Positions 5,201 through 11,850 of a stretch of 64,000 nucleotides of DNA are shown one piece after another. Position 1 is the first letter of the stretch. The number at the start of each line of letters is the position of its first letter. The stretch is taken from positions 124,001-188,000 of the IMG/VR virus record IMGVR_UViG_3300032236_000747; one strand, 5' to 3'. Position numbers and translations under genes: made by a program. Under the pieces are notes generated by a model that was not told the origin of the DNA, ran no database searches, and saw nothing but the letters and a program-made list of their open reading frames with translations.

Positions 5201-6214
5201 ATGGCTCTATTCAAAAAAGTTGCTTGTTTTACAGACATTCACTTCGGATTAAAATCAAATTCAGGAACACACAACAAAGACTGCGAAGAATTTGTAGATT
5301 GGTTTATCGAACAAGCGCAGAAGGCAGGTTGCGAAACTTGTATTTTCCTCGGCGATTGGCATCATAACAGAAACTCGATCAATCTTATAACTTTGGATAC
5401 CAGCATTAGGTGTCTAGAAAAACTAGGCGCGGCCTTTGATCAGTTCTTTTGGTTTCCTGGCAACCACGATTTGTTTTACAAAGACAAGCGTGACATTCAT
5501 TCTAGTGCGTTTGGTCGCCATATACCTGGTGTTACTGTTGTAGACAGTGTTATGACCCAGGGTGATGTTACCCTAGTTCCGTGGCTTGTCGGGGATGAGT
5601 GGAAGACAATGAAAGACGTTAAGAGCAAATATGTGTTCGGTCACTTTGAACTTCCGTTATTCTACATGAACGCTATGGTTCAAATGCCGGATCACGGCGA
5701 ACTAACTGCCGATCAGTTTAATGGCCCTGACTATGTTTTCAGCGGACACTTTCACAAAAGACAAAACAAAGGCAATATCTTTTACATAGGTAATGCCTTT
5801 CCCCATAACTTTGCTGATACTTGGGACGATGAACGAGGAATGATGGTTATGGAATGGGGCGGAGAGCCCGAGTTTATTAACTGGGACAACTGTCCTAAGT
5901 TCCGCACTGTTAAGTTAAGTGAACTTATTGATAAAAAAGATACTATCCTTAAGAGCAAAATGCATCTCAAGGTACAACTAGACATTGATATATCGTTCGA
6001 AGAAGCAAACTTTATCAAAGAATCGTTTGTAACTGAATACGACATTAGAGAAATCAGTCTTATACAAGAACGAAATAGCATAGAAAGTAACGTAGACGAC
6101 AATGCCGAAGTTAAGTTTGAAAGTGTTGATCAAATCGTTACTGAGCAACTAGTTAACATCGAAAGTGAAACTATCGATAAGTTAGTGCTGTTAGAAATAT
6201 ACAGAGCTTTATAA
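5201..6214 (+). CDS. gp47: Recombination endonuclease subunit, Mre11/SbcD-like
   Basis: Metallophosphoesterase motifs DIHFG, GDWHH, GNHD, GHFE, SGHFH. Confidence 0.93.
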   Translation: MALFKKVACFTDIHFGLKSNSGTHNKDCEEFVDWFIEQAQKAGCETCIFLGDWHHNRNSINLITLDTSIRCLEKLGAAFDQFFWFPGNHDLFYKDKRDIHSSAFGRHIPGVTVVDSVMTQGDVTLVPWLVGDEWKTMKDVKSKYVFGHFELPLFYMNAMVQMPDHGELTADQFNGPDYVFSGHFHKRQNKGNIFYIGNAFPHNFADTWDDERGMMVMEWGGEPEFINWDNCPKFRTVKLSELIDKKDTILKSKMHLKVQLDIDISFEEANFIKESFVTEYDIREISLIQERNSIESNVDDNAEVKFESVDQIVTEQLVNIESETIDKLVLLEIYRAL

Positions 6215-6716: not shown

Positions 6717-8498
6717 ATGACATTTAAACTTAAAACTATAACAGTAAAAAACTTTATGAGCGTGGGTGCTCAGACCCAAGCTGTGGCCTTTGACCGCGAA
6801 CACCTAACATTAGTCTTAGGAGAGAACGTAGATCAAGGCGGTGGCGAAGGTGGAGAACGCAATGGTACAGGTAAAACTACTATCATTAACGCACTCAGCT
6901 ATGCTCTGTATGGACATATCATACGTGCCGAGGTAAGAAAAGAGAATCTAATCAACTTGATCAACGGTAAAGGCATGTTAGTTACTGTTGAGTTTGAACA
7001 AAACGGTGTAAAATACAAGATTGAACGAGGCCGTAAGCCCAATATTTTGAAACTTTACATCAATGATCAAGAGCAAAAGAGCGAAGACAGTGACGAAAGT
7101 CAGGGCGATAGCCGAGAAACACAGAAGCATATAGAACAGTTATTGAACATGAGTCACACTATGTTCAAGCATTTAGTGGCTTTAAACACCTATACTGAGC
7201 CGTTTTTAAGCATGAAAGCGGGCGATCAACGCGAAGTTATTGAACAGTTACTAGGTATTACACTATTAAGTGAAAAAGCAGAACAACTAAAACAACTACT
7301 AAAAGAAACCAAAGATTCTATACAAGCAGAGACATTTAAAATCGACGGAATCAAAAAAGCCAACGAAAATGTACAGAAAAGCATTGAAAGTCTAGCACTC
7401 AAGAGTAGTGCTTGGAATAATAAAAAAGACGAAGATCTAATAAAGCTCAGCAGAGCAATAGCAGACCTTGAATCTATAGACATTGAAGCAGAACTAGGAA
7501 AGCACGCAGACCTTAAAGTATATGACGAACTAAGTGCTAGGATTCGTAGTTTGCAAAAAGAACAAGCAACTATAGAATCTGCTATAGGGCAAGCTGACAA
7601 AACACTTAAAAAATATCTAGAAGAGCTTGATAAACTTGCTAATAAGACATGCCATGCGTGTGAGCAAGAACTACATGACCATAAACACGAAGAAATGACT
7701 GAGTTAGCTCAGAAACATGTAGAAGAAGCTCAAATATATTGTACAAAACTGTTAAACAACTTCAATAAAATCAGAACCGAACTAGATGAAATCGGGGATA
7801 TTAACGGACGTCCTAATACGTACTACGAAACTTTAAACGAAGCATTGGGTCACAGAAACAATCTAGCTAACCTAATGAATAGCTTAGAGAATCGTGCTCT
7901 TGAAGAAAACCCATATGATGAGCAGATAGAAGAGTTAAAGAAGACAGCGTTACAACCGTTAGATTGGGAAATAGTCAACACTTTAACCAAATATCGAGAT
8001 CACCAGGACTTTTTACTCAAGCTGTTAACTAATAAAGATAGTTTTATCCGTAAAAAGATCATAGATCAGAATCTAACGTTCTTAAATAAACGCCTAGGCT
8101 ACTATGTTGACAAACTAGGACTACCACATACTGTTGCTTTCCAAAACGATTTAACTGTTATTATTACACAGTTAGGCAAAGACATAGATTTTTATAACCT
8201 TAGTAGAGGCGAAGGTAACAGAGTTATACTTGCTACTAGCTTTGCGTTTAGAGATGTATGGGAGAACTTGTACCAACCTATTAACTTATTGTTCATCGAT
8301 GAGCTGTTAGACAACGGAACCGATGCTAGCGGTGTGGAAAAGAGTCTTGCTATCCTTAAAAAGATGAGCAGAGAGCGCAATAAGAACATATTTGTTATTA
8401 GTCATAGGGACGAACTGCTAGGTCGAGTTGATAATATCTTGCGTGTTGTTAAAGAAAACGGGTTTACAAGTTATGAAAACTCAGCAGAACCGGTTTGA
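6717..8498 (+). CDS. gp46: Recombination ATPase subunit, Rad50/SbcC-like
   Basis: Walker A GERNGTGKTT, coiled coil with CHAC zinc hook, signature LSRGE, Walker B LLFIDE, H-loop VISH. Confidence 0.95.
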   Translation: MTFKLKTITVKNFMSVGAQTQAVAFDREHLTLVLGENVDQGGGEGGERNGTGKTTIINALSYALYGHIIRAEVRKENLINLINGKGMLVTVEFEQNGVKYKIERGRKPNILKLYINDQEQKSEDSDESQGDSRETQKHIEQLLNMSHTMFKHLVALNTYTEPFLSMKAGDQREVIEQLLGITLLSEKAEQLKQLLKETKDSIQAETFKIDGIKKANENVQKSIESLALKSSAWNNKKDEDLIKLSRAIADLESIDIEAELGKHADLKVYDELSARIRSLQKEQATIESAIGQADKTLKKYLEELDKLANKTCHACEQELHDHKHEEMTELAQKHVEEAQIYCTKLLNNFNKIRTELDEIGDINGRPNTYYETLNEALGHRNNLANLMNSLENRALEENPYDEQIEELKKTALQPLDWEIVNTLTKYRDHQDFLLKLLTNKDSFIRKKIIDQNLTFLNKRLGYYVDKLGLPHTVAFQNDLTVIITQLGKDIDFYNLSRGEGNRVILATSFAFRDVWENLYQPINLLFIDELLDNGTDASGVEKSLAILKKMSRERNKNIFVISHRDELLGRVDNILRVVKENGFTSYENSAEPV

Positions 8499-8525
8499 CC
8501 ATATAGAAACAAGGGCATGAGATAA

Positions 8526-8822
8526 ATGTATACGGATGACTACGAAAAATTACATCAAGCGTACATAGCAAAGATGGTAGAATACCATAATGCGTATCAT
8601 GCATACATGTACGGCGCTCGCAGCAAGCCTAAAAACTTTGCTATGCGTGTTGTATTGAAGGAACTTTTAAAGTTGAATAAGGCACTAATAGCAGAATCGA
8701 TTGCTGTTAGGAAGAAAAAGATAGAAGCGTATAGCGATACCTATCAAGGACAACGGAAAAATAGCGGAGACGCTAGTAGATTTTACAAAAATGACGTGGA
8801 CACATCAGGGGACAATAGTTGA
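8526..8822 (+). CDS. Small basic helical hypothetical protein
   Basis: 98-aa ORF, co-oriented, overlaps the start of the GIY-YIG gene. Confidence 0.65.
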   Translation: MYTDDYEKLHQAYIAKMVEYHNAYHAYMYGARSKPKNFAMRVVLKELLKLNKALIAESIAVRKKKIEAYSDTYQGQRKNSGDASRFYKNDVDTSGDNS

Positions 8823-9216
8823 AACACTACCAGAGGACTGTGTGGGCTTCGTTTATCTCATTACAAATATGCTGACGGGCAGGAAATACGTAGGCAAAAA
8901 ACTAGCGAAATTCGCGAAAACAACTTATAAAACTAAAACACTTAAAAACGGCACCAAAAAAAGGCAAAAGATTCGCAGCAAGGTAGACAGTGACTGGCAA
9001 GAGTATTACGGTTCTAGTGTAGAACTAACAGCAGATATTGCTAAGTTAGGTAAAGATAACTTTTCAAGAGAGATCCTATACTACTGTAAGAGCAAAGCAG
9101 AAACAAGTTATACTGAAGCAAGAGAACAATTCGATAGAAAAGTTTTAGAATCAACAGATTATTATAACGGACAGATATCTGTTCGTGTACATGGCTCACA
9201 CATTTTAAAGAAGTAA
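8791..9216 (+). CDS. Stand-alone GIY-YIG family nuclease (catalytic domain only)
   Basis: 'GFVYLITN...RKYVGKK...DWQEYYGSS...FSREILYYC...SYTEAREQ...YYN' gives the GIY-YIG hairpin motifs, helical Glu and terminal Asn; no C-terminal DNA-binding domain. Confidence 0.8.
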   Translation: MTWTHQGTIVETLPEDCVGFVYLITNMLTGRKYVGKKLAKFAKTTYKTKTLKNGTKKRQKIRSKVDSDWQEYYGSSVELTADIAKLGKDNFSREILYYCKSKAETSYTEAREQFDRKVLESTDYYNGQISVRVHGSHILKK

Positions 9217-9575
9217 GCAGTAACGGCTCGCATTGGCCAATTTCGAATGCCCTAGACCTGGATCTCGGATCACAGGGACGGAAGACTCTTCGCTGTACAA
9301 GAGCACTCAACTACTACCCGCCAGGATGAAGATCGTAAACGCCACGATTTAGTTGTTTGAAGATATTAATAAGAGCTGAAAAGAGGGATAAAACCCAGGT
9401 CAAAGCATAGGATTGTATCTATGTTTTTGATTGCCGTCAGAATAAGACGTAGCTAGTGGTACAGGCTGACCGCCACGGTAATGCTATAATACAATGTGAT
9501 TTGCGTACTCGGATAATGTCAAGTTTCTTAGCCCTTTCTGGGCTAAGTGTGACCATTGTATCTGGATAATATATT
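9217..9575 (+). ncRNA. Candidate large structured non-coding RNA, family unassigned
   Basis: No co-oriented ORF. Many stems: cctg-gatc/gatc-a-cagg 9257-9276; ctctt/aagag 9286-9303; caacta/tagttg 9308-9355; gatcgt/acgatt 9331-9349; aaagcatag/ctatgtttt 9402-9427; cttagccc/gggctaag 9527-9547; atacaatg/cattgtat 9489-9561. G-U wobbles favour the + strand. Confidence 0.55.
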
Positions 9576-9577
9576 AA

Positions 9578-9647
9578 GCTTCGCTTTACTATCAAAGTAA
9601 AAATTGCTTCAAGCGATAGCGTAGAAGCAAGTGAACGCAGTTCACTT
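9578..9647. repeat. Cluster of short inverted repeats with GNA/GNNA mini-hairpin loops
   Basis: GCGAAGC on - strand (9578-9584); tttact/agtaaa 9585-9601; ttgcttc/gaagcaa 9604-9630 enclosing GC-GATA-GC; aagtgaac-GCA-gttcactt 9629-9647. Confidence 0.7.
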
Positions 9648-9660
9648 TACTGTATGTGAC

Positions 9661-9666
9661 TAAATA
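9661..9666 (+). promoter_or_regulatory. Late promoter core TAAATA
   Basis: Upstream of ATG 9700. Confidence 0.6.
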
Positions 9667-9699
9667 AATCATCAATATTCCACAGTTAAGGAAAAATAT

Positions 9700-10782
9700 A
9701 TGAAGATTTCTCAGTTAGTACAGTTTAGTTTAGACGAAACAACTAAAAATCCCGCAAGAGCTGCTTCTCAGGAAACAGGGCGTAATCTTGCTAGATCTAT
9801 GGCTAGTGGAGGTTTAACTCCAGATCAACTACAAAGATCTATTCAGGGACAACAGTCTAGGCTAGTTAAAACTCCTAACACTGGAGATACTCTAGGACAA
9901 ACAACTCCTCAACAAAGACTAGCTGCACAGAGACAGACTAATGGCGTTGCTCCTGCTGCTCCTGGTACTCAAGTAGTTCCTGCTAATACTCAAGCAGCAC
10001 CCCAAGCTACAAATACTCAAGTAGCTCCTCAAGGTCCAGTTAATCTAGGTGCTGCTACTCCAGATGCTGGAGAAGAAAGACCAGGTAACGACCTTGCTAC
10101 TACTCAAGAACCTGCTGCTGCACCTGCTGAGAAGGGTAAGCTAGCCAAAGCCGGTGATTGGGTCAAAGGTAAACTATCTAATGCTTCTCTACAAGGCGCA
10201 AGTAATCTTATTCAACGTGGTGCTGCTAATGCCAAGGACAACATTCCGGGCATCGCCGGATATGCTAGTGACCTAGTGGGCAACACAGCTCAAGCAGTTG
10301 CTCCGGGTGCTAACAAAGCTATCAGCGCAGTTGGTGACGTAGGTACCAACCTAGCACAAAACGCAAGTAACGTTGCCAGTGCTGTAGGCGGCGGACTAAC
10401 TAAAACTATCGGAGCCACGCTAGGTGGATTTGGTCAAGGCTATCACACAGCACGTCAAGGCAAGAGTTTTAGAGATGCTGCTGGTGGACTACCGGGTGCT
10501 CCTAGACTAGGTGGCCAATACCAAGGTGATCCATATCAAGGTGGAGATACAGGTAACGCAGGTACCCCAACAAGTTCGGGTACAGATCGTCCAGCTAGTG
10601 GCGGTATTGGTGGAGCCATGCGTCAGGCTGCTGGTGTAGGCGGTCAAGGCGGCGGCGAGGGCACTGATGCTATTAGCGATCTAAAAAATAGACTAGGAAG
10701 AGTTGAGAAAGCCATGGGACTAGCTGAATCTAAGAAGCCCCAAGGCACTATGCTTCCTCATGTTAGAAGAAGGGCAGTTTAG
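9700..10782 (+). CDS. Low-complexity Gly/Ala/Gln-rich protein, putative internal head (ejected) protein
   Basis: N-terminus MKISQLVQFSLDE resembles T4 capsid-targeting/gp21-cleaved leaders; late promoter; largely disordered composition. Confidence 0.5.
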   Translation: MKISQLVQFSLDETTKNPARAASQETGRNLARSMASGGLTPDQLQRSIQGQQSRLVKTPNTGDTLGQTTPQQRLAAQRQTNGVAPAAPGTQVVPANTQAAPQATNTQVAPQGPVNLGAATPDAGEERPGNDLATTQEPAAAPAEKGKLAKAGDWVKGKLSNASLQGASNLIQRGAANAKDNIPGIAGYASDLVGNTAQAVAPGANKAISAVGDVGTNLAQNASNVASAVGGGLTKTIGATLGGFGQGYHTARQGKSFRDAAGGLPGAPRLGGQYQGDPYQGGDTGNAGTPTSSGTDRPASGGIGGAMRQAAGVGGQGGGEGTDAISDLKNRLGRVEKAMGLAESKKPQGTMLPHVRRRAV

Positions 10783-10981
10783 TTTCTTTAGTTGTTTCGA
10801 GATTACTGTCGATTATCTTAGAGATAATCTCTCTGTTTTCAAAGTCTAGTTGGAAGGCTTCTTCAAAGGTAAGGCTTCCCCTCATAAACCAACACATTCT
10901 AAAAAGATCTTTCTTTAAGGCTTTTGTATCTGCTTCCATTTCTTTAACTAACTCTTCGATCTCTGGGATCGTCAGACGCAA
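10763..10981 (-). CDS. gp51: Baseplate hub assembly catalyst (gp51-like); possibly made as a -1 frameshift extension of gp26
   Basis: 'LFRMCWFMRGSLTFEEAFQLDFENREIISKII...TKLPFF' gp51-like pattern; weak TTG start; frame is open upstream through the gp26 stop. Confidence 0.7.
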   Translation of the reverse strand: MRLTIPEIEELVKEMEADTKALKKDLFRMCWFMRGSLTFEEAFQLDFENREIISKIIDSNLETTKETKLPFF

Positions 10982-10986
10982 AAGCC

Positions 10987-11850
10987 TTACGCGAAAAAAT
11001 CTGAGTTATTAAAGTTAATAGGAATCTCGTAGGTAGCAGGAGCACCTTCTGCCTGTTGCTCCTCAGTTGTGTTAGCAGTCAATGGTTTTAGTTCATTATG
11101 TTTCTTTAGTTCGTCTAAGTGATTTTTAATTTTATCAAAAACATCTTTGTCACAGTTACCGATAAACTCTTTAATGTGTTTTGCGTCAGTGACTTCTACA
11201 CCAGTTGAAACTATTTTATAAATGCTTTCGCTGATTAGATCTACGGTAACTTGTGTTAAGTTACCGAAGCTACGATTAAACAATTCTAACTTTTGTTCTT
11301 CACTAAGCGAATCATCGTTGACCATGTTCAATATTTTTTGAGTTTCAAAACTTTTTAAACCAATCTGCGTCATGTGTTTATAAGTTAACGGTCTAACAAA
11401 AACAGTCAAATCTTCGGAAATCTGTATTTGCTCATCCCATCCGACTGAAGTTAACTGTTGATCTAACAAATGCCTTAGGTCTAAATCAAACTCCACTTCT
11501 TCAAGGGTTACTGGTATCTTATATTTGATAGGCATCCGATCACCGTATGTAGCAAGACGTATAGCAATAAGAATGCTATCCAAATCAAGAGTAGGGCACG
11601 CCCAGGCATTTTTAATATTTGGAATACAACTTTGTATAACATCGACCATGGCCTGTCCGTTAAGTAACGCATCTGGAGTTTTAAATATTAACTCATCCCT
11701 AGCAGTCATCGAATATACTGGAAAATCTCCAGTCTCGGTCATTTCTAAACTCTTTGGCGCCCAATATGTACCGTTGGTTGGCAACTTCATGTAGATCTTT
11801 GGTTGCCTCATAAAGTTGGCTAATGGGTTTGGTCTTGCTACTGGTTGCAT
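10987..11850 (-). CDS. gp26: Baseplate hub assembly protein (gp26-like)
   Basis: 'NPLANFMRQPKIYMKLPT...VYSMTARDELIFKTPDALLNG...DLDSILIAIRLATYG' gp26 pattern. Confidence 0.8.
   Translation of the reverse strand: MQPVARPNPLANFMRQPKIYMKLPTNGTYWAPKSLEMTETGDFPVYSMTARDELIFKTPDALLNGQAMVDVIQSCIPNIKNAWACPTLDLDSILIAIRLATYGDRMPIKYKIPVTLEEVEFDLDLRHLLDQQLTSVGWDEQIQISEDLTVFVRPLTYKHMTQIGLKSFETQKILNMVNDDSLSEEQKLELFNRSFGNLTQVTVDLISESIYKIVSTGVEVTDAKHIKEFIGNCDKDVFDKIKNHLDELKKHNELKPLTANTTEEQQAEGAPATYEIPINFNNSDFFA

What the first reader, a model, noticed from the sequence alone, without database searches (positions are those of the whole stretch)
8791..9575. Minimal GIY-YIG nuclease followed directly by about 360 nt of densely structured non-coding RNA candidate: possible ribonucleoprotein system
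Seen: the 141-aa GIY-YIG protein is catalytic-domain only, with a very basic insertion (AKTTYKTKTLKNGTKKRQKIRSK) and no DNA-recognition domain. Right after its stop begins the largest non-coding gap of the window (9217-9699), filled with nested stems (9257-9276, 9286-9303, 9308-9355, 9331-9349, 9402-9427, 9527-9547). There are long-range options: acctgg 9256-9261 with ccaggt 9395-9400, and atacaat 9489-9495 with either copy of the direct repeat attgtatct (9412-9420, lying in a hairpin loop so a pseudoknot, or 9555-9563). G-U pairs indicate the + strand, co-transcribed with the nuclease. Known: phages carry large structured RNAs (GOLLD, ROOL), and nuclease-plus-adjacent-RNA pairs define HEARO/omegaRNA systems. 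Inference: the RNA could scaffold or guide the nuclease, or be an independent large ncRNA.
Basis: partly seen in the sequence, partly recalled or inferred. Interest (0 to 1): 0.8.

Follow-up and report, generated by a model that had tools for sequence, protein, structure and literature searches.

The report
Orphan structured RNA beside small nuclease
The non-coding stretch is a full-length, roughly 350-base copy of an already catalogued RNA family of unknown function (Polynucleobacter-1), and it lies next to the small DNA-cutting enzyme gene through shared gene order, not as the enzyme's partner, although two always-identical sequence boxes in the RNA remain unexplained.

Summary
ORF 8791-9216 is a catalytic-domain-only GIY-YIG nuclease, and 9217-9699 is the largest non-coding gap of the window.

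The RNA is not new. Positions 9225-9358 match Rfam RF01718 (Polynucleobacter-1 RNA) at 109 bits, and conservation continues to about 9575. That extension corresponds to the 'tail' in the 2010 discovery alignment, whose authors also noted the same upstream gene family.

The ribonucleoprotein or guide-RNA reading is not supported.
- The pair sits at one fixed position (gp47, gp46, nuclease, RNA, then a convergent baseplate module) in a clade of T4-like phages.
- About a fifth of close GIY-YIG loci have no RNA.
- Six RNA loci carry a PD-(D/E)XK nuclease in place of the GIY-YIG gene.
- Freshwater Burkholderiales carry the whole RNA in genomic islands with no such nuclease nearby.
- No guide-like variable segment exists.

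The best reading is an autonomous structured non-coding RNA gene at the 3' end of an operon. Its function is unknown.

New here:
- the family is placed in phage genomes;
- the partner gene is identified as a GIY-YIG nuclease that is widely mislabelled 'NAD synthetase';
- two boxes flanking the last hairpin keep identical 7-nt cores in 118 of 120 RNAs, and this is unexplained.

The parts
8791..9216 (+). 141-aa GIY-YIG nuclease with a catalytic domain only (PHROG 447, often mislabelled 'NAD synthetase')
   Evidence: Pfam PF19835, E 4e-33. PHROG 447, E 2.5e-37. Fold matches I-TevI, EndoII and UvrC. Invariant residues Y22, Y33, E109 and N126.
8908..8988 (+). Basic insertion, residues 40-66, modelled as a long beta-hairpin
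   Evidence: AF2 strands 40-50 and 56-66 with pLDDT above 95. The insertion is also present in relatives whose loci lack the RNA.
9225..9575 (+). Full-length structured RNA: Polynucleobacter-1 family, 5' domain plus 3' 'tail'
   Evidence: Conservation in 49-122 homologs runs from about 9225 to about 9575 and then stops.
9225..9358 (+). 5' domain, the part covered by the Rfam RF01718 model
   Evidence: cmscan 109 bits against a gathering score of 37, model positions 1-141 of 141, E 1e-24.
9225..9250 (+). P0 (9225-9227 with 9236-9238) crossing P1 (9230-9234 with 9246-9250): a small 5' pseudoknot
   Evidence: P0: 88% standard pairs, 2 of 3 pairs with compensatory changes. P1: 99%, 4 of 5.
9258..9275 (+). 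P2 hairpin
   Evidence: 96% standard pairs. The three distal pairs covary; the proximal pairs are invariant.
9284..9304 (+). P3 hairpin (9286-9290 with 9299-9303), plus the covarying 9284/9304 pair
9308..9355 (+). P4 (9308-9312 with 9351-9355), which encloses P5 (9318-9319 with 9324-9325) and P6 (9331-9336 with 9344-9349)
   Evidence: 96-100% standard pairs; 4 of 5 and 4 of 6 pairs show compensatory changes. Extra covariation at 9314/9328, and U-C to C-U exchange at 9317/9327.
9385..9396 (+). P7, only 3 bp in this copy. Most relatives have 5-6 bp closed by a GNRA-type loop.
   Evidence: Seen in the alignment. Pair counts on the MAFFT columns are unreliable here.
9402..9427 (+). P8 hairpin. Its loop 9412-9418 forms pseudoknot PK1.
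   Evidence: 9 of 9 pairs show compensatory changes.
9412..9495 (+). PK1: 9412-9418 pairs with 9489-9495
   Evidence: 98% standard pairs, 7 of 7 compensatory. Kept in the bacterial copies with a different sequence.
9436..9486 (+). P9 (9436-9440 with 9466-9470) crossing P11 (9450-9453 with 9483-9486) and P12 (9456-9459 with 9473-9476): a second tail pseudoknot
   Evidence: 96-99% standard pairs; 3 of 5, 4 of 4 and 2 of 4 pairs compensatory.
9507..9518 (+). Twin box 1 (core 9511-9517)
   Evidence: Its core is identical to that of box 2 in 118 of 120 distinct RNAs, across at least 14 core variants.
9527..9547 (+). P13, the terminal hairpin. It is not followed by a U run.
   Evidence: 97% standard pairs, 3 of 8 compensatory. 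No terminator call.
9560..9571 (+). Twin box 2 (core 9564-9570), at the 3' edge of conservation
9600..9676 (+). Conserved leader of the next gene (o360). Not part of the RNA.
   Evidence: Retained at 90% identity in relative L002, where the RNA cassette is replaced.

Best explanation
Two separate things lie side by side.

(1) Positions 9225-9575 are a full-length gene for the Polynucleobacter-1 RNA (Rfam RF01718), about 350 nt. The RNA has a 5' domain (P0-P6) and a 3' domain (P7-P13) with pseudoknots. In this phage it is most likely transcribed as the 3' end of the rightward gp47, gp46, nuclease operon. This step is inferred from the 8-nt gap, the absence of a terminator, and the absence of room for a promoter. 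It then most likely acts as an autonomous, stably folded non-coding RNA. It is an accessory cassette that T4-like freshwater phages share with genomic islands of their probable hosts (Polynucleobacter, Limnohabitans).

The mechanism I favour is inferred and weakly supported. The folded RNA is a scaffold that presents two identical single-stranded boxes, either side of its last hairpin, to a two-fold or duplicated partner that is not encoded next to it.

(2) ORF 8791-9216 is an independent small GIY-YIG DNA nuclease of a large phage family. Its place here follows the recombination genes gp46/gp47. Close relatives put it after nrdB, which is where T4 keeps denA. Its adjacency to the RNA is clade-level gene order, not a functional pairing.
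For: RNA identity:
- Rfam hit of 109 bits, full length.
- Conservation and covariation extend to 9575.
- The 2010 raw alignment already holds a 'tail' and a 'tailpknot' subfamily.

Autonomy of the RNA:
- 26 bacterial loci show the RNA (27 matched the search pattern) and none has a GIY-YIG, gp46 or gp47 gene nearby. The RNA sits between DUF6641 and a 188-aa tyrosine recombinase in islands with an integrase. Six of these show the whole architecture by profile search, and PK1, P13 and the boxes are visible in aligned copies.
- Six phage loci have a PDDEXK_15 nuclease 9-12 nt upstream in place of GIY-YIG, and four have unrelated ORFs inserted.
- About 17 close GIY-YIG loci lack the RNA by HMM; the 13 of them that were scanned with Rfam are also negative.
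- L002 and L003 are 96% identical through the nuclease gene, and then the RNA is cleanly swapped for other DNA.

Not a 5' leader: in 47 of 99 distinct loci the next gene is convergent and less than 150 nt away.

One gene order.

Nuclease independence:
- 2273 representative clusters, mostly 130-165 aa.
- 516 phage isolates carry the gene in other contexts without the RNA.
- Copies 76-79% identical sit after nrdA-nrdB, mirroring T4 nrdB-denA.

Twin boxes.
Against: - 125 of 139 RNA loci do have the GIY-YIG gene about 10-60 nt upstream.
- Every phage locus has some ORF ending within about 20 nt of the RNA.
- All six GIY-less loci carry another nuclease, so a nuclease-RNA link is not formally excluded.
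- No transcript ends were mapped. No RNA run was listed for the phage. The only metatranscriptome evidence is thin: two 151-nt exact contigs over the 5' 280 nt of a bacterial copy and none on its flanks.
- The function and the partner of the boxes are unknown. No complementary partner was found in the RNA or in the loci.
Confidence: 0.7

Rival explanations
1. Ribonucleoprotein system. The RNA binds the domain-poor GIY-YIG nuclease through its basic hairpin and scaffolds or guides it, in the manner of HEARO/omega-RNA systems.
For: Tight adjacency in 125 of 139 RNA loci. The nuclease has no DNA-recognition domain and carries a basic beta-hairpin. When GIY-YIG is missing, another nuclease takes its slot.
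Against: The RNA occurs in bacteria with no such nuclease in the 8-kb loci. About a fifth of close GIY-YIG genes lack the RNA yet keep the basic hairpin. 516 isolate phages carry the protein; the RNA found no match in that collection by blastn, and an Rfam scan of the nearest isolate's locus found none. All co-occurrences share one gene order. The variable positions are paired or lie in the 7-nt twin boxes, so no guide-length free segment exists. The box cores differ in 16 of 37 pairs of loci whose GIY-YIG proteins are 95-98% identical.
Confidence: 0.06
2. Homing-endonuclease landing site. The GIY-YIG and PD-(D/E)XK genes are selfish free-standing homing endonucleases that insert beside the conserved RNA gene because they cut within it in genomes that lack them.
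For: Two unrelated nuclease families occupy exactly the same slot. The nearest fold is the I-TevI catalytic domain. The same GIY-YIG gene, 76-79% identical, also sits next to nrd genes, a classic homing-endonuclease neighbourhood in T4. A highly conserved RNA gene would be a good target.
Against: No empty site was found among 139 loci. The protein lacks any DNA-binding domain. It is conserved as well as or better than gp46 and gp47 (62-88% against 48-84%). It stays in place where the RNA is absent. The replacing nuclease is annotated as a Holliday-junction resolvase type, which fits a required DNA-processing role after gp46/gp47.
Confidence: 0.1
3. Cis-acting mRNA element. The RNA works only in cis, as a 3' structure that stabilises or terminates the upstream operon transcript, or as a leader that regulates the downstream gene. 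The discovery paper's table tentatively marked the motif as cis-regulatory.
For: It starts 8 nt after a stop codon and lies at the end of a transcription unit that faces a convergent one. The discovery table marks it cis-regulatory 'y'.
Against: 47 of 99 loci have no co-directional downstream gene within reach. P13 has no U run and no terminator was called. About 350 nt with three pseudoknots and invariant loops is far more than a 3' end needs. In bacteria the RNA stands after a divergent gene, with its own upstream intergenic region.
Confidence: 0.07
4. The 3' part is a DNA-level site. The twin boxes that flank P13 are protein-binding or crossover sites in DNA, such as iterons of an origin or core sites of a site-specific recombinase, for which identity of the two copies is what matters.
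For: The two boxes stay identical while their sequence drifts. In bacterial islands the locus is followed by a small tyrosine recombinase and an AAA ATPase.
Against: The surrounding helices show RNA-type covariation with many G-U pairs on one strand. No recombinase gene lies near the phage copy. No deleted or duplicated form was seen among 121 RNAs. The bacterial neighbours have no homologs in the phage loci.
Confidence: 0.07

Closest known systems
Polynucleobacter-1 RNA motif (Rfam RF01718; Weinberg et al. 2010, PMC2864571)
   Same: Positions 9225-9358 match the full model at 109 bits. The discovery alignment also has a 3' 'tail' with a pseudoknot. It notes a location downstream of the GOS11034 / PSSM2_218-like gene. 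I confirm that this gene is the same GIY-YIG family (37% identity, E 6e-21).
   Different: The authors found no copy in any sequenced purified phage and tentatively called the motif cis-regulatory. Here it lies in a 354-kb T4-like viral contig and about 140 related viral loci, often with no downstream gene. The Rfam model covers only the first 134 nt. The twin boxes flanking P13 are not mentioned in the parts of the paper and supplement I read.
I-TevI / Seg-type GIY-YIG homing endonucleases (Pfam SegE_GIY-YIG PF19835; PDB 1ln0)
   Same: Same catalytic fold and motifs.
   Different: There is no linker or DNA-binding domain. A 27-residue basic beta-hairpin is inserted after the YIG strand. The gene has a fixed position with no empty sites in the clade.
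T4 endonuclease II (DenA; PDB 2wsh)
   Same: A small phage GIY-YIG enzyme (144 aa as annotated) with a catalytic domain only. Close relatives of the window's gene sit directly after nrdA-nrdB, exactly where T4 has denA. Fold match Z 5.4.
   Different: No significant sequence relationship beyond the GIY-YIG motif (hhalign E 0.15). A role in host-DNA degradation is not tested.
HEARO / omega-RNA systems (IscB, IsrB, TnpB)
   Same: A nuclease gene with an adjacent, conserved structured RNA.
   Different: Co-occurrence is not obligatory, there is no guide segment, the nuclease family differs, and no transposon ends are present. Knowledge of these systems is from memory.
Large orphan phage or prophage ncRNAs (GOLLD, ROOL)
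   Same: An elaborate, conserved, pseudoknotted RNA carried by phages and mobile elements, with no known function.
   Different: No Rfam match to either family. It is smaller (about 350 nt). Multimer formation is untested.
RNA templates with terminal identity (telomerase RNA template repeats; DRT2 ncRNA template jumping); from memory, a lead only
   Same: Two short direct repeats in one RNA must stay identical to each other whatever their sequence.
   Different: No reverse transcriptase was seen among the annotated neighbours of the phage or island copies. Here the repeats are 53 nt apart around a hairpin.

Membership tests
Polynucleobacter-1 RNA (RF01718) | Covariance-model score at or above the curated gathering score, over the full model | tested here: met
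   109 bits against 37; model positions 1-141 of 141.
Polynucleobacter-1 RNA (RF01718) | The model's helices are kept by compensatory changes in homologs | tested here: met
   P1-P4 and P6: 94-100% standard pairs with 3-4 covarying pairs each.
Polynucleobacter-1 RNA (RF01718) | The 3' 'tail' with pseudoknot, as in the discovery alignment | tested here: met
   P8 plus PK1 at 7 of 7 compensatory pairs. The discovery file lists 'tail' and 'tailpknot' subfamilies.
Polynucleobacter-1 RNA (RF01718) | Location downstream of the GOS11034 / PSSM2_218-like gene | tested here: met
   PSSM2_218 aligns to the window ORF at 37% identity, E 6e-21.
GIY-YIG nuclease superfamily (SegE_GIY-YIG PF19835) | Profile match above the curated cut-off | tested here: met
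   114.6 bits against 25.
GIY-YIG nuclease superfamily (SegE_GIY-YIG PF19835) | GIY-YIG alpha/beta fold | tested here: met
   The top four VIA-align matches are all GIY-YIG nucleases, Z 8.4 to 5.2. Foldseek itself found nothing.
GIY-YIG nuclease superfamily (SegE_GIY-YIG PF19835) | Catalytic residues (two Tyr, Arg, Glu, Asn) | tested here: inconclusive
   Y22, Y33, E109 and N126 are invariant in 62 sequences. I could not assign the equivalent of the catalytic Arg with confidence; R93 is nearly invariant and K37 is invariant.
Free-standing homing endonuclease (Seg / I-TevI type) | A separate DNA-binding domain that recognises a long target | tested here: not met
   The catalytic domain spans residues 3-129 of 141. 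Family members are mostly 130-165 aa.
Free-standing homing endonuclease (Seg / I-TevI type) | Sporadic presence, with empty sites in close relatives | tested here: not met
   0 of 139 RNA loci have an empty slot: 125 GIY-YIG, 6 PD-(D/E)XK, 4 with an extra ORF, and 4 where no ORF was called although tblastn finds GIY-YIG just upstream.
RNA-guided nuclease systems (HEARO / OMEGA-like) | Obligatory co-occurrence of the nuclease and its RNA | tested here: not met
   The RNA occurs without the nuclease in 26 bacterial loci and 6 phage loci. The nuclease occurs without the RNA in about 17 close loci and in isolates.
RNA-guided nuclease systems (HEARO / OMEGA-like) | A variable guide segment next to a conserved scaffold | tested here: not met
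   The variable columns are helix partners or the duplicated 7-nt boxes. No free hypervariable stretch of guide length exists.
Group I intron with a GIY-YIG ORF | Intron core structure and a split host gene | tested here: not met
   No Rfam intron match down to E 1. The flanking ORFs are complete and unrelated to each other.
Cis-regulatory 5' leader or riboswitch | A co-directional gene immediately downstream in most members | tested here: not met
   In 47 of 99 distinct phage loci the next gene is convergent and less than 150 nt away.
Intrinsic terminator (for hairpin 9527-9547) | A G+C-rich hairpin followed by a U run | tested here: not met
   The hairpin is followed by purine-rich sequence, and no terminator was called in 8300-11100 apart from an unrelated site at 8762.
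GOLLD / ROOL large ncRNAs | A match to the family covariance models | tested here: not met
   RF01718 was the only hit in the window.

The most novel reading that the evidence does not exclude
The twin boxes (9507-9518 and 9560-9571) mark a process in which only the identity of the two copies matters. Candidates are realignment or template jumping on an RNA template, a crossover between two sites, or binding of a strictly two-fold partner whose specificity drifts. On this reading the Polynucleobacter-1 RNA is the working core of a still unrecognised mechanism shared by T4-like phages and genomic islands of freshwater Burkholderiales, possibly used in competition between them.
Probability: 0.15. 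Interest if true: 0.8.

Novelty: new member of a known kind. Interest (0 to 1): 0.4.

Why it matters
The proposed new nuclease-plus-RNA system turns out to be a catalogued orphan RNA sitting next to an unrelated gene, and this is the main result. The work also adds usable facts about that orphan.
- The RNA is about 350 nt, not 140 nt, and has three pseudoknots.
- It is carried by many T4-like freshwater phages. The discovery paper found no phage copy.
- In half the phage loci it cannot be a 5' leader.
- The same RNA sits on integrative islands of culturable hosts (Polynucleobacter, Limnohabitans), which makes genetic experiments possible.
- The neighbouring gene family, labelled 'NAD synthetase' in hundreds of phage records, is a GIY-YIG nuclease.
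- The same-sequence covariation of the two boxes is an unusual constraint. Standard covariation tools, which look for complementarity, would miss it, and it may point to the mechanism.

Tried and rejected
- **blastn against isolate phages and plasmids.** The phage locus and the bacterial RNA found no match.
- **Sequence search of the nuclease against PDB, and Foldseek against PDB and Swiss-Prot models.** Nothing significant. Only the non-Foldseek aligner found the GIY-YIG fold.
- **Single-sequence folding energy.** Uninformative.
- **RNA-seq for the phage locus.** No run was listed. Contigs laid on a bacterial copy were mostly from DNA-like libraries, and only one metatranscriptome gave a weak hint.
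- **Promoter and terminator scans.** Nothing above chance near the RNA.
- **tRNA and tmRNA scan of the window.** None found.
- **Pattern-only viral hits with no profile match.** These were chance matches. None of the 31 scanned has an RF01718 hit, and two are HIV-1 records; they were not pursued.
- **A third strand complementary to the twin boxes.** None inside the RNA (mutual information scan), and none within several kb at a consistent offset.
- **Pairing of box 1 with box 2.** Considered and rejected by my own reading of the box sequences: the best-pairing combination (A in box 1 with G in box 2) never occurs.
- **Deleted or duplicated forms between the boxes.** None among 121 RNAs.
- **DUF6641.** No literature, and only a faint MobI-like lead.
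- **T4 DenA as a sequence homolog.** Rejected.
- **The count of structure pairs and a covariance model of the tail.** Not used. Pair counts were done in my own scripts so that I did not have to type long structure strings.
Full report
**What is there.** The window is part of a 354,680-bp viral contig (IMGVR_UViG_3300032236_000747) with T4-like genes. These include an Mre11-like gp47 (5201-6214), a Rad50-like gp46 (6717-8498), and a T4 baseplate protein on the minus strand (10987-11850).

ORF 8791-9216 encodes 141 aa that match Pfam SegE_GIY-YIG end to end (E 4e-33). The 483-nt gap that follows (9217-9699) is the largest non-coding stretch in the 64 kb.

**The RNA is a known family.** An Rfam scan of the whole window gives a single hit. 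RF01718, Polynucleobacter-1 RNA, matches 9225-9358 on the + strand at 109 bits against a gathering score of 37, over the full model.

The discovery paper (Weinberg et al. 2010, PMC2864571) describes 16 sequences from fresh water and one Polynucleobacter genome. It states that most lie downstream of genes of family GOS11034, 'with possible homology to PSSM2_218 in cyanophage P-SSM2'. It also states that no copy was found in any sequenced purified phage. Its raw alignment carries a 3' 'tail' and a 'tailpknot' beyond the part that became the Rfam model.

I fetched PSSM2_218, which is annotated 'NAD synthetase'. It aligns to the window ORF at 37% identity, E 6e-21.

**Extent and structure.**
- A protein-based scan found more than 586 viral loci with the nuclease gene.
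- A DNA pattern from the RNA core found at least 118 viral stretches.
- BLAST, a 49-sequence alignment and a profile HMM show continuous conservation from about 9225 to about 9575, after which similarity stops.
- Pair counts on that alignment, and an unbiased mutual-information scan on 122 distinct full-length copies, recover the Rfam helices.
- In the tail they recover hairpin P8, the pseudoknot of its loop with 9489-9495 (7 of 7 pairs compensatory), a second pseudoknot (P9 against P11/P12), and the terminal hairpin P13. A small 5' pseudoknot (P0 against P1) is also supported.
- G-U pairs outnumber A-C by 509 to 85 in the helices, which fixes the + strand.
The pairing 9256-9261 with 9395-9400 has no covariation and competes with P2.
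- The single sequence folds no better than shuffles. Only comparison with homologs shows the structure.

**Is the RNA tied to the nuclease?** In phages the pair sits in one fixed order: gp47, gp46, a variable stretch, nuclease, RNA, a variable stretch, then a convergent 72-aa gene and the baseplate gene. These co-occurrences are therefore not independent.

Of 139 RNA loci with enough upstream DNA:
- 125 have the GIY-YIG gene directly upstream;
- 6 have a 171-aa PDDEXK_15 nuclease 9-12 nt upstream instead (PHROG label 'RusA-like Holliday junction resolvase');
- 4 have unrelated ORFs inserted between the nuclease gene and the RNA;
- in the remaining 4 my ORF caller found nothing, although tblastn places GIY-YIG just upstream.

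In the other direction, about 17 of the 80 closest GIY-YIG loci have no RNA by HMM, and the 13 of them scanned with Rfam are also negative. Eleven of these are in the same gp46 context. Of the other six, the two I examined (L047, L080) have the gene directly after nrdA-nrdB. L002 and L003 are 96% identical through the nuclease gene. The roughly 380-nt RNA cassette of L003 is then replaced in L002 by about 680 nt that include an 85-aa ORF, and homology resumes at the leader of the next gene. The L002 nuclease keeps the basic insertion.

516 isolate phage genomes (cyanophages, the OM43 phage Melnitz, phiN3, ACP17 and others) carry homologs at 51% identity or less, in other contexts. No RNA is found in the Melnitz locus.

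**The RNA in bacteria.** A pattern taken from the Polynucleobacter-type sequences found 27 places in genomes of Polynucleobacter, Limnohabitans and other freshwater Burkholderiales, sometimes twice in one genome.

None has a GIY-YIG, gp46 or gp47 homolog within the 8-kb loci. The neighbours of the bacterial copies have no homologs in the phage loci either.

The bacterial context is conserved: a divergent DUF6641 gene, the RNA, a 188-aa tyrosine recombinase, two unknown genes and an AAA ATPase. An integrase and metal-resistance cargo lie nearby, so this is an integrative island. The profile search spans the whole RNA in six bacterial copies, and the aligned copies keep the pseudoknot (with a different, still complementary sequence), P13 and the boxes.

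The RNA is therefore a self-contained unit found in two unrelated genetic settings. This is the strongest argument against an obligatory RNA-nuclease complex.

**Other constraints on function.**
- In 47 of 99 distinct phage loci the next gene is convergent and 45-150 nt away, so the RNA is not a 5' leader there.
- P13 is not followed by a U run, and no terminator or convincing promoter is called.
- The RNA starts within about 20 nt of the stop codon of whatever ORF precedes it. In phages it is therefore probably made by read-through of the operon. This is an inference.
- No RNA run was listed for the phage. In one library labelled metatranscriptomic, exact-match contigs cover only the 5' 280 nt of a Polynucleobacter copy and not its flanks, at very low depth. 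This is a hint, not proof.

**The nuclease.**
- AlphaFold2 gives a confident model in which the basic insertion forms a long beta-hairpin.
- A Foldseek-independent search puts I-TevI's catalytic domain, a 5hmC-specific GIY-YIG restriction enzyme, T4 EndoII and UvrC at the top.
- The family is large (2273 representative clusters) and almost always 130-165 aa.
- Within the clade it is conserved at least as well as gp46 and gp47, and its slot is never empty, which does not fit a selfish homing gene.
- Three observations point the same way: it follows the recombination nuclease genes, it is replaced by a resolvase-type PD-(D/E)XK protein, and relatives place it after nrdB, where T4 has denA. Together they suggest a required DNA-processing nuclease. 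This is inference.
- Sequence similarity to DenA is not significant.

**An unexplained feature.** Two 12-nt boxes, 53 nt apart on either side of P13 (9507-9518 and 9560-9571), share a 7-nt core.
- Across 122 distinct RNAs the core takes at least 14 forms. The two copies are identical in 118 of the 120 RNAs where both align.
- Mutual information between equivalent positions is 0.94-1.0 bit, as high as for the best helices. The relation is same-base, not complementary.
- No third, complementary segment covaries with the boxes inside the RNA or lies at a consistent place nearby.
- The cores differ between phages whose nucleases are 95-98% identical.
- I could not explain this. Twin sites for a two-fold partner, sites where identity itself is required, or template realignment all remain open.

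**Verdict.** The headline interpretation is not supported. The object is a phage-borne, full-length member of a known orphan RNA family next to an independent GIY-YIG nuclease.

Noticed in passing
window 9507-9518 and 9560-9571: Two direct-repeat boxes flanking hairpin P13 keep identical 7-nt cores in 118 of 120 homologous RNAs, while the core itself takes at least 14 forms. The covariation is same-base, about 1 bit at three positions, and no complementary partner was found.
   Followed up: partly
window 8791-9216; L229:26712-27149 (P-SSM2 PSSM2_218): This GIY-YIG family (PHROG 447) is labelled 'NAD synthetase' in many of the 516 matching phage records. Profile and fold evidence show it is a nuclease, so the label looks like a propagated annotation error.
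   Followed up: yes
L126, L158, L164, L171, L181, L191 (for example L164:4127-4642): In six related phages a 171-aa PDDEXK_15 nuclease replaces the GIY-YIG gene in the same slot, ending 9-12 nt before the RNA. This is a non-orthologous replacement of one nuclease by another.
   Followed up: partly
L047:2338-2766, L080:3998-4423: Copies of the same nuclease gene, 76-79% identical, sit directly after nrdA-nrdB with no RNA. This is the position of denA (EndoII) in phage T4 (L234:4518-4952).
   Followed up: partly
L199-L225, L230 (for example L230:4443-11468): The bacterial copies of the RNA lie in an island backbone: integrase, AAA ATPase, two unknown genes, a 188-aa tyrosine recombinase, the RNA, then DUF6641. 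Chromate and arsenic resistance cargo lies nearby. Some genomes hold two copies.
   Followed up: partly
window 9317/9327, 9314/9328, 9284/9304: Extra covariation outside the Rfam helices: a U-C to C-U exchange at 9317/9327 next to P5, and standard pairs at 9314/9328 and 9284/9304.
   Followed up: no
window 9600-9676: A conserved segment with two small hairpins just upstream of the 360-aa low-complexity gene (9700-10782). It is kept at about 90% identity in a relative whose RNA cassette is replaced, so it is probably that gene's promoter or leader.
   Followed up: no
L181:6007-7922: Two genes lie between gp46 and the PD-(D/E)XK gene in some relatives. One has radical SAM and SPASM domain matches; the other has no Pfam match. 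The stretch between gp46 and the RNA is a hot spot for inserted cargo.
   Followed up: no
L082, L154: Two of the chance matches to the DNA pattern in the viral collection are HIV-1 records, recognised by their Rfam elements. They are unrelated to the finding and were not examined further.
   Followed up: no
L223:3420-3698: In one freshwater metatranscriptome, exact-match contigs cover only the 5' 280 nt of a Polynucleobacter copy of the RNA. They end at its predicted 5' end, with nothing on the flanking genes, at very low depth.
   Followed up: partly
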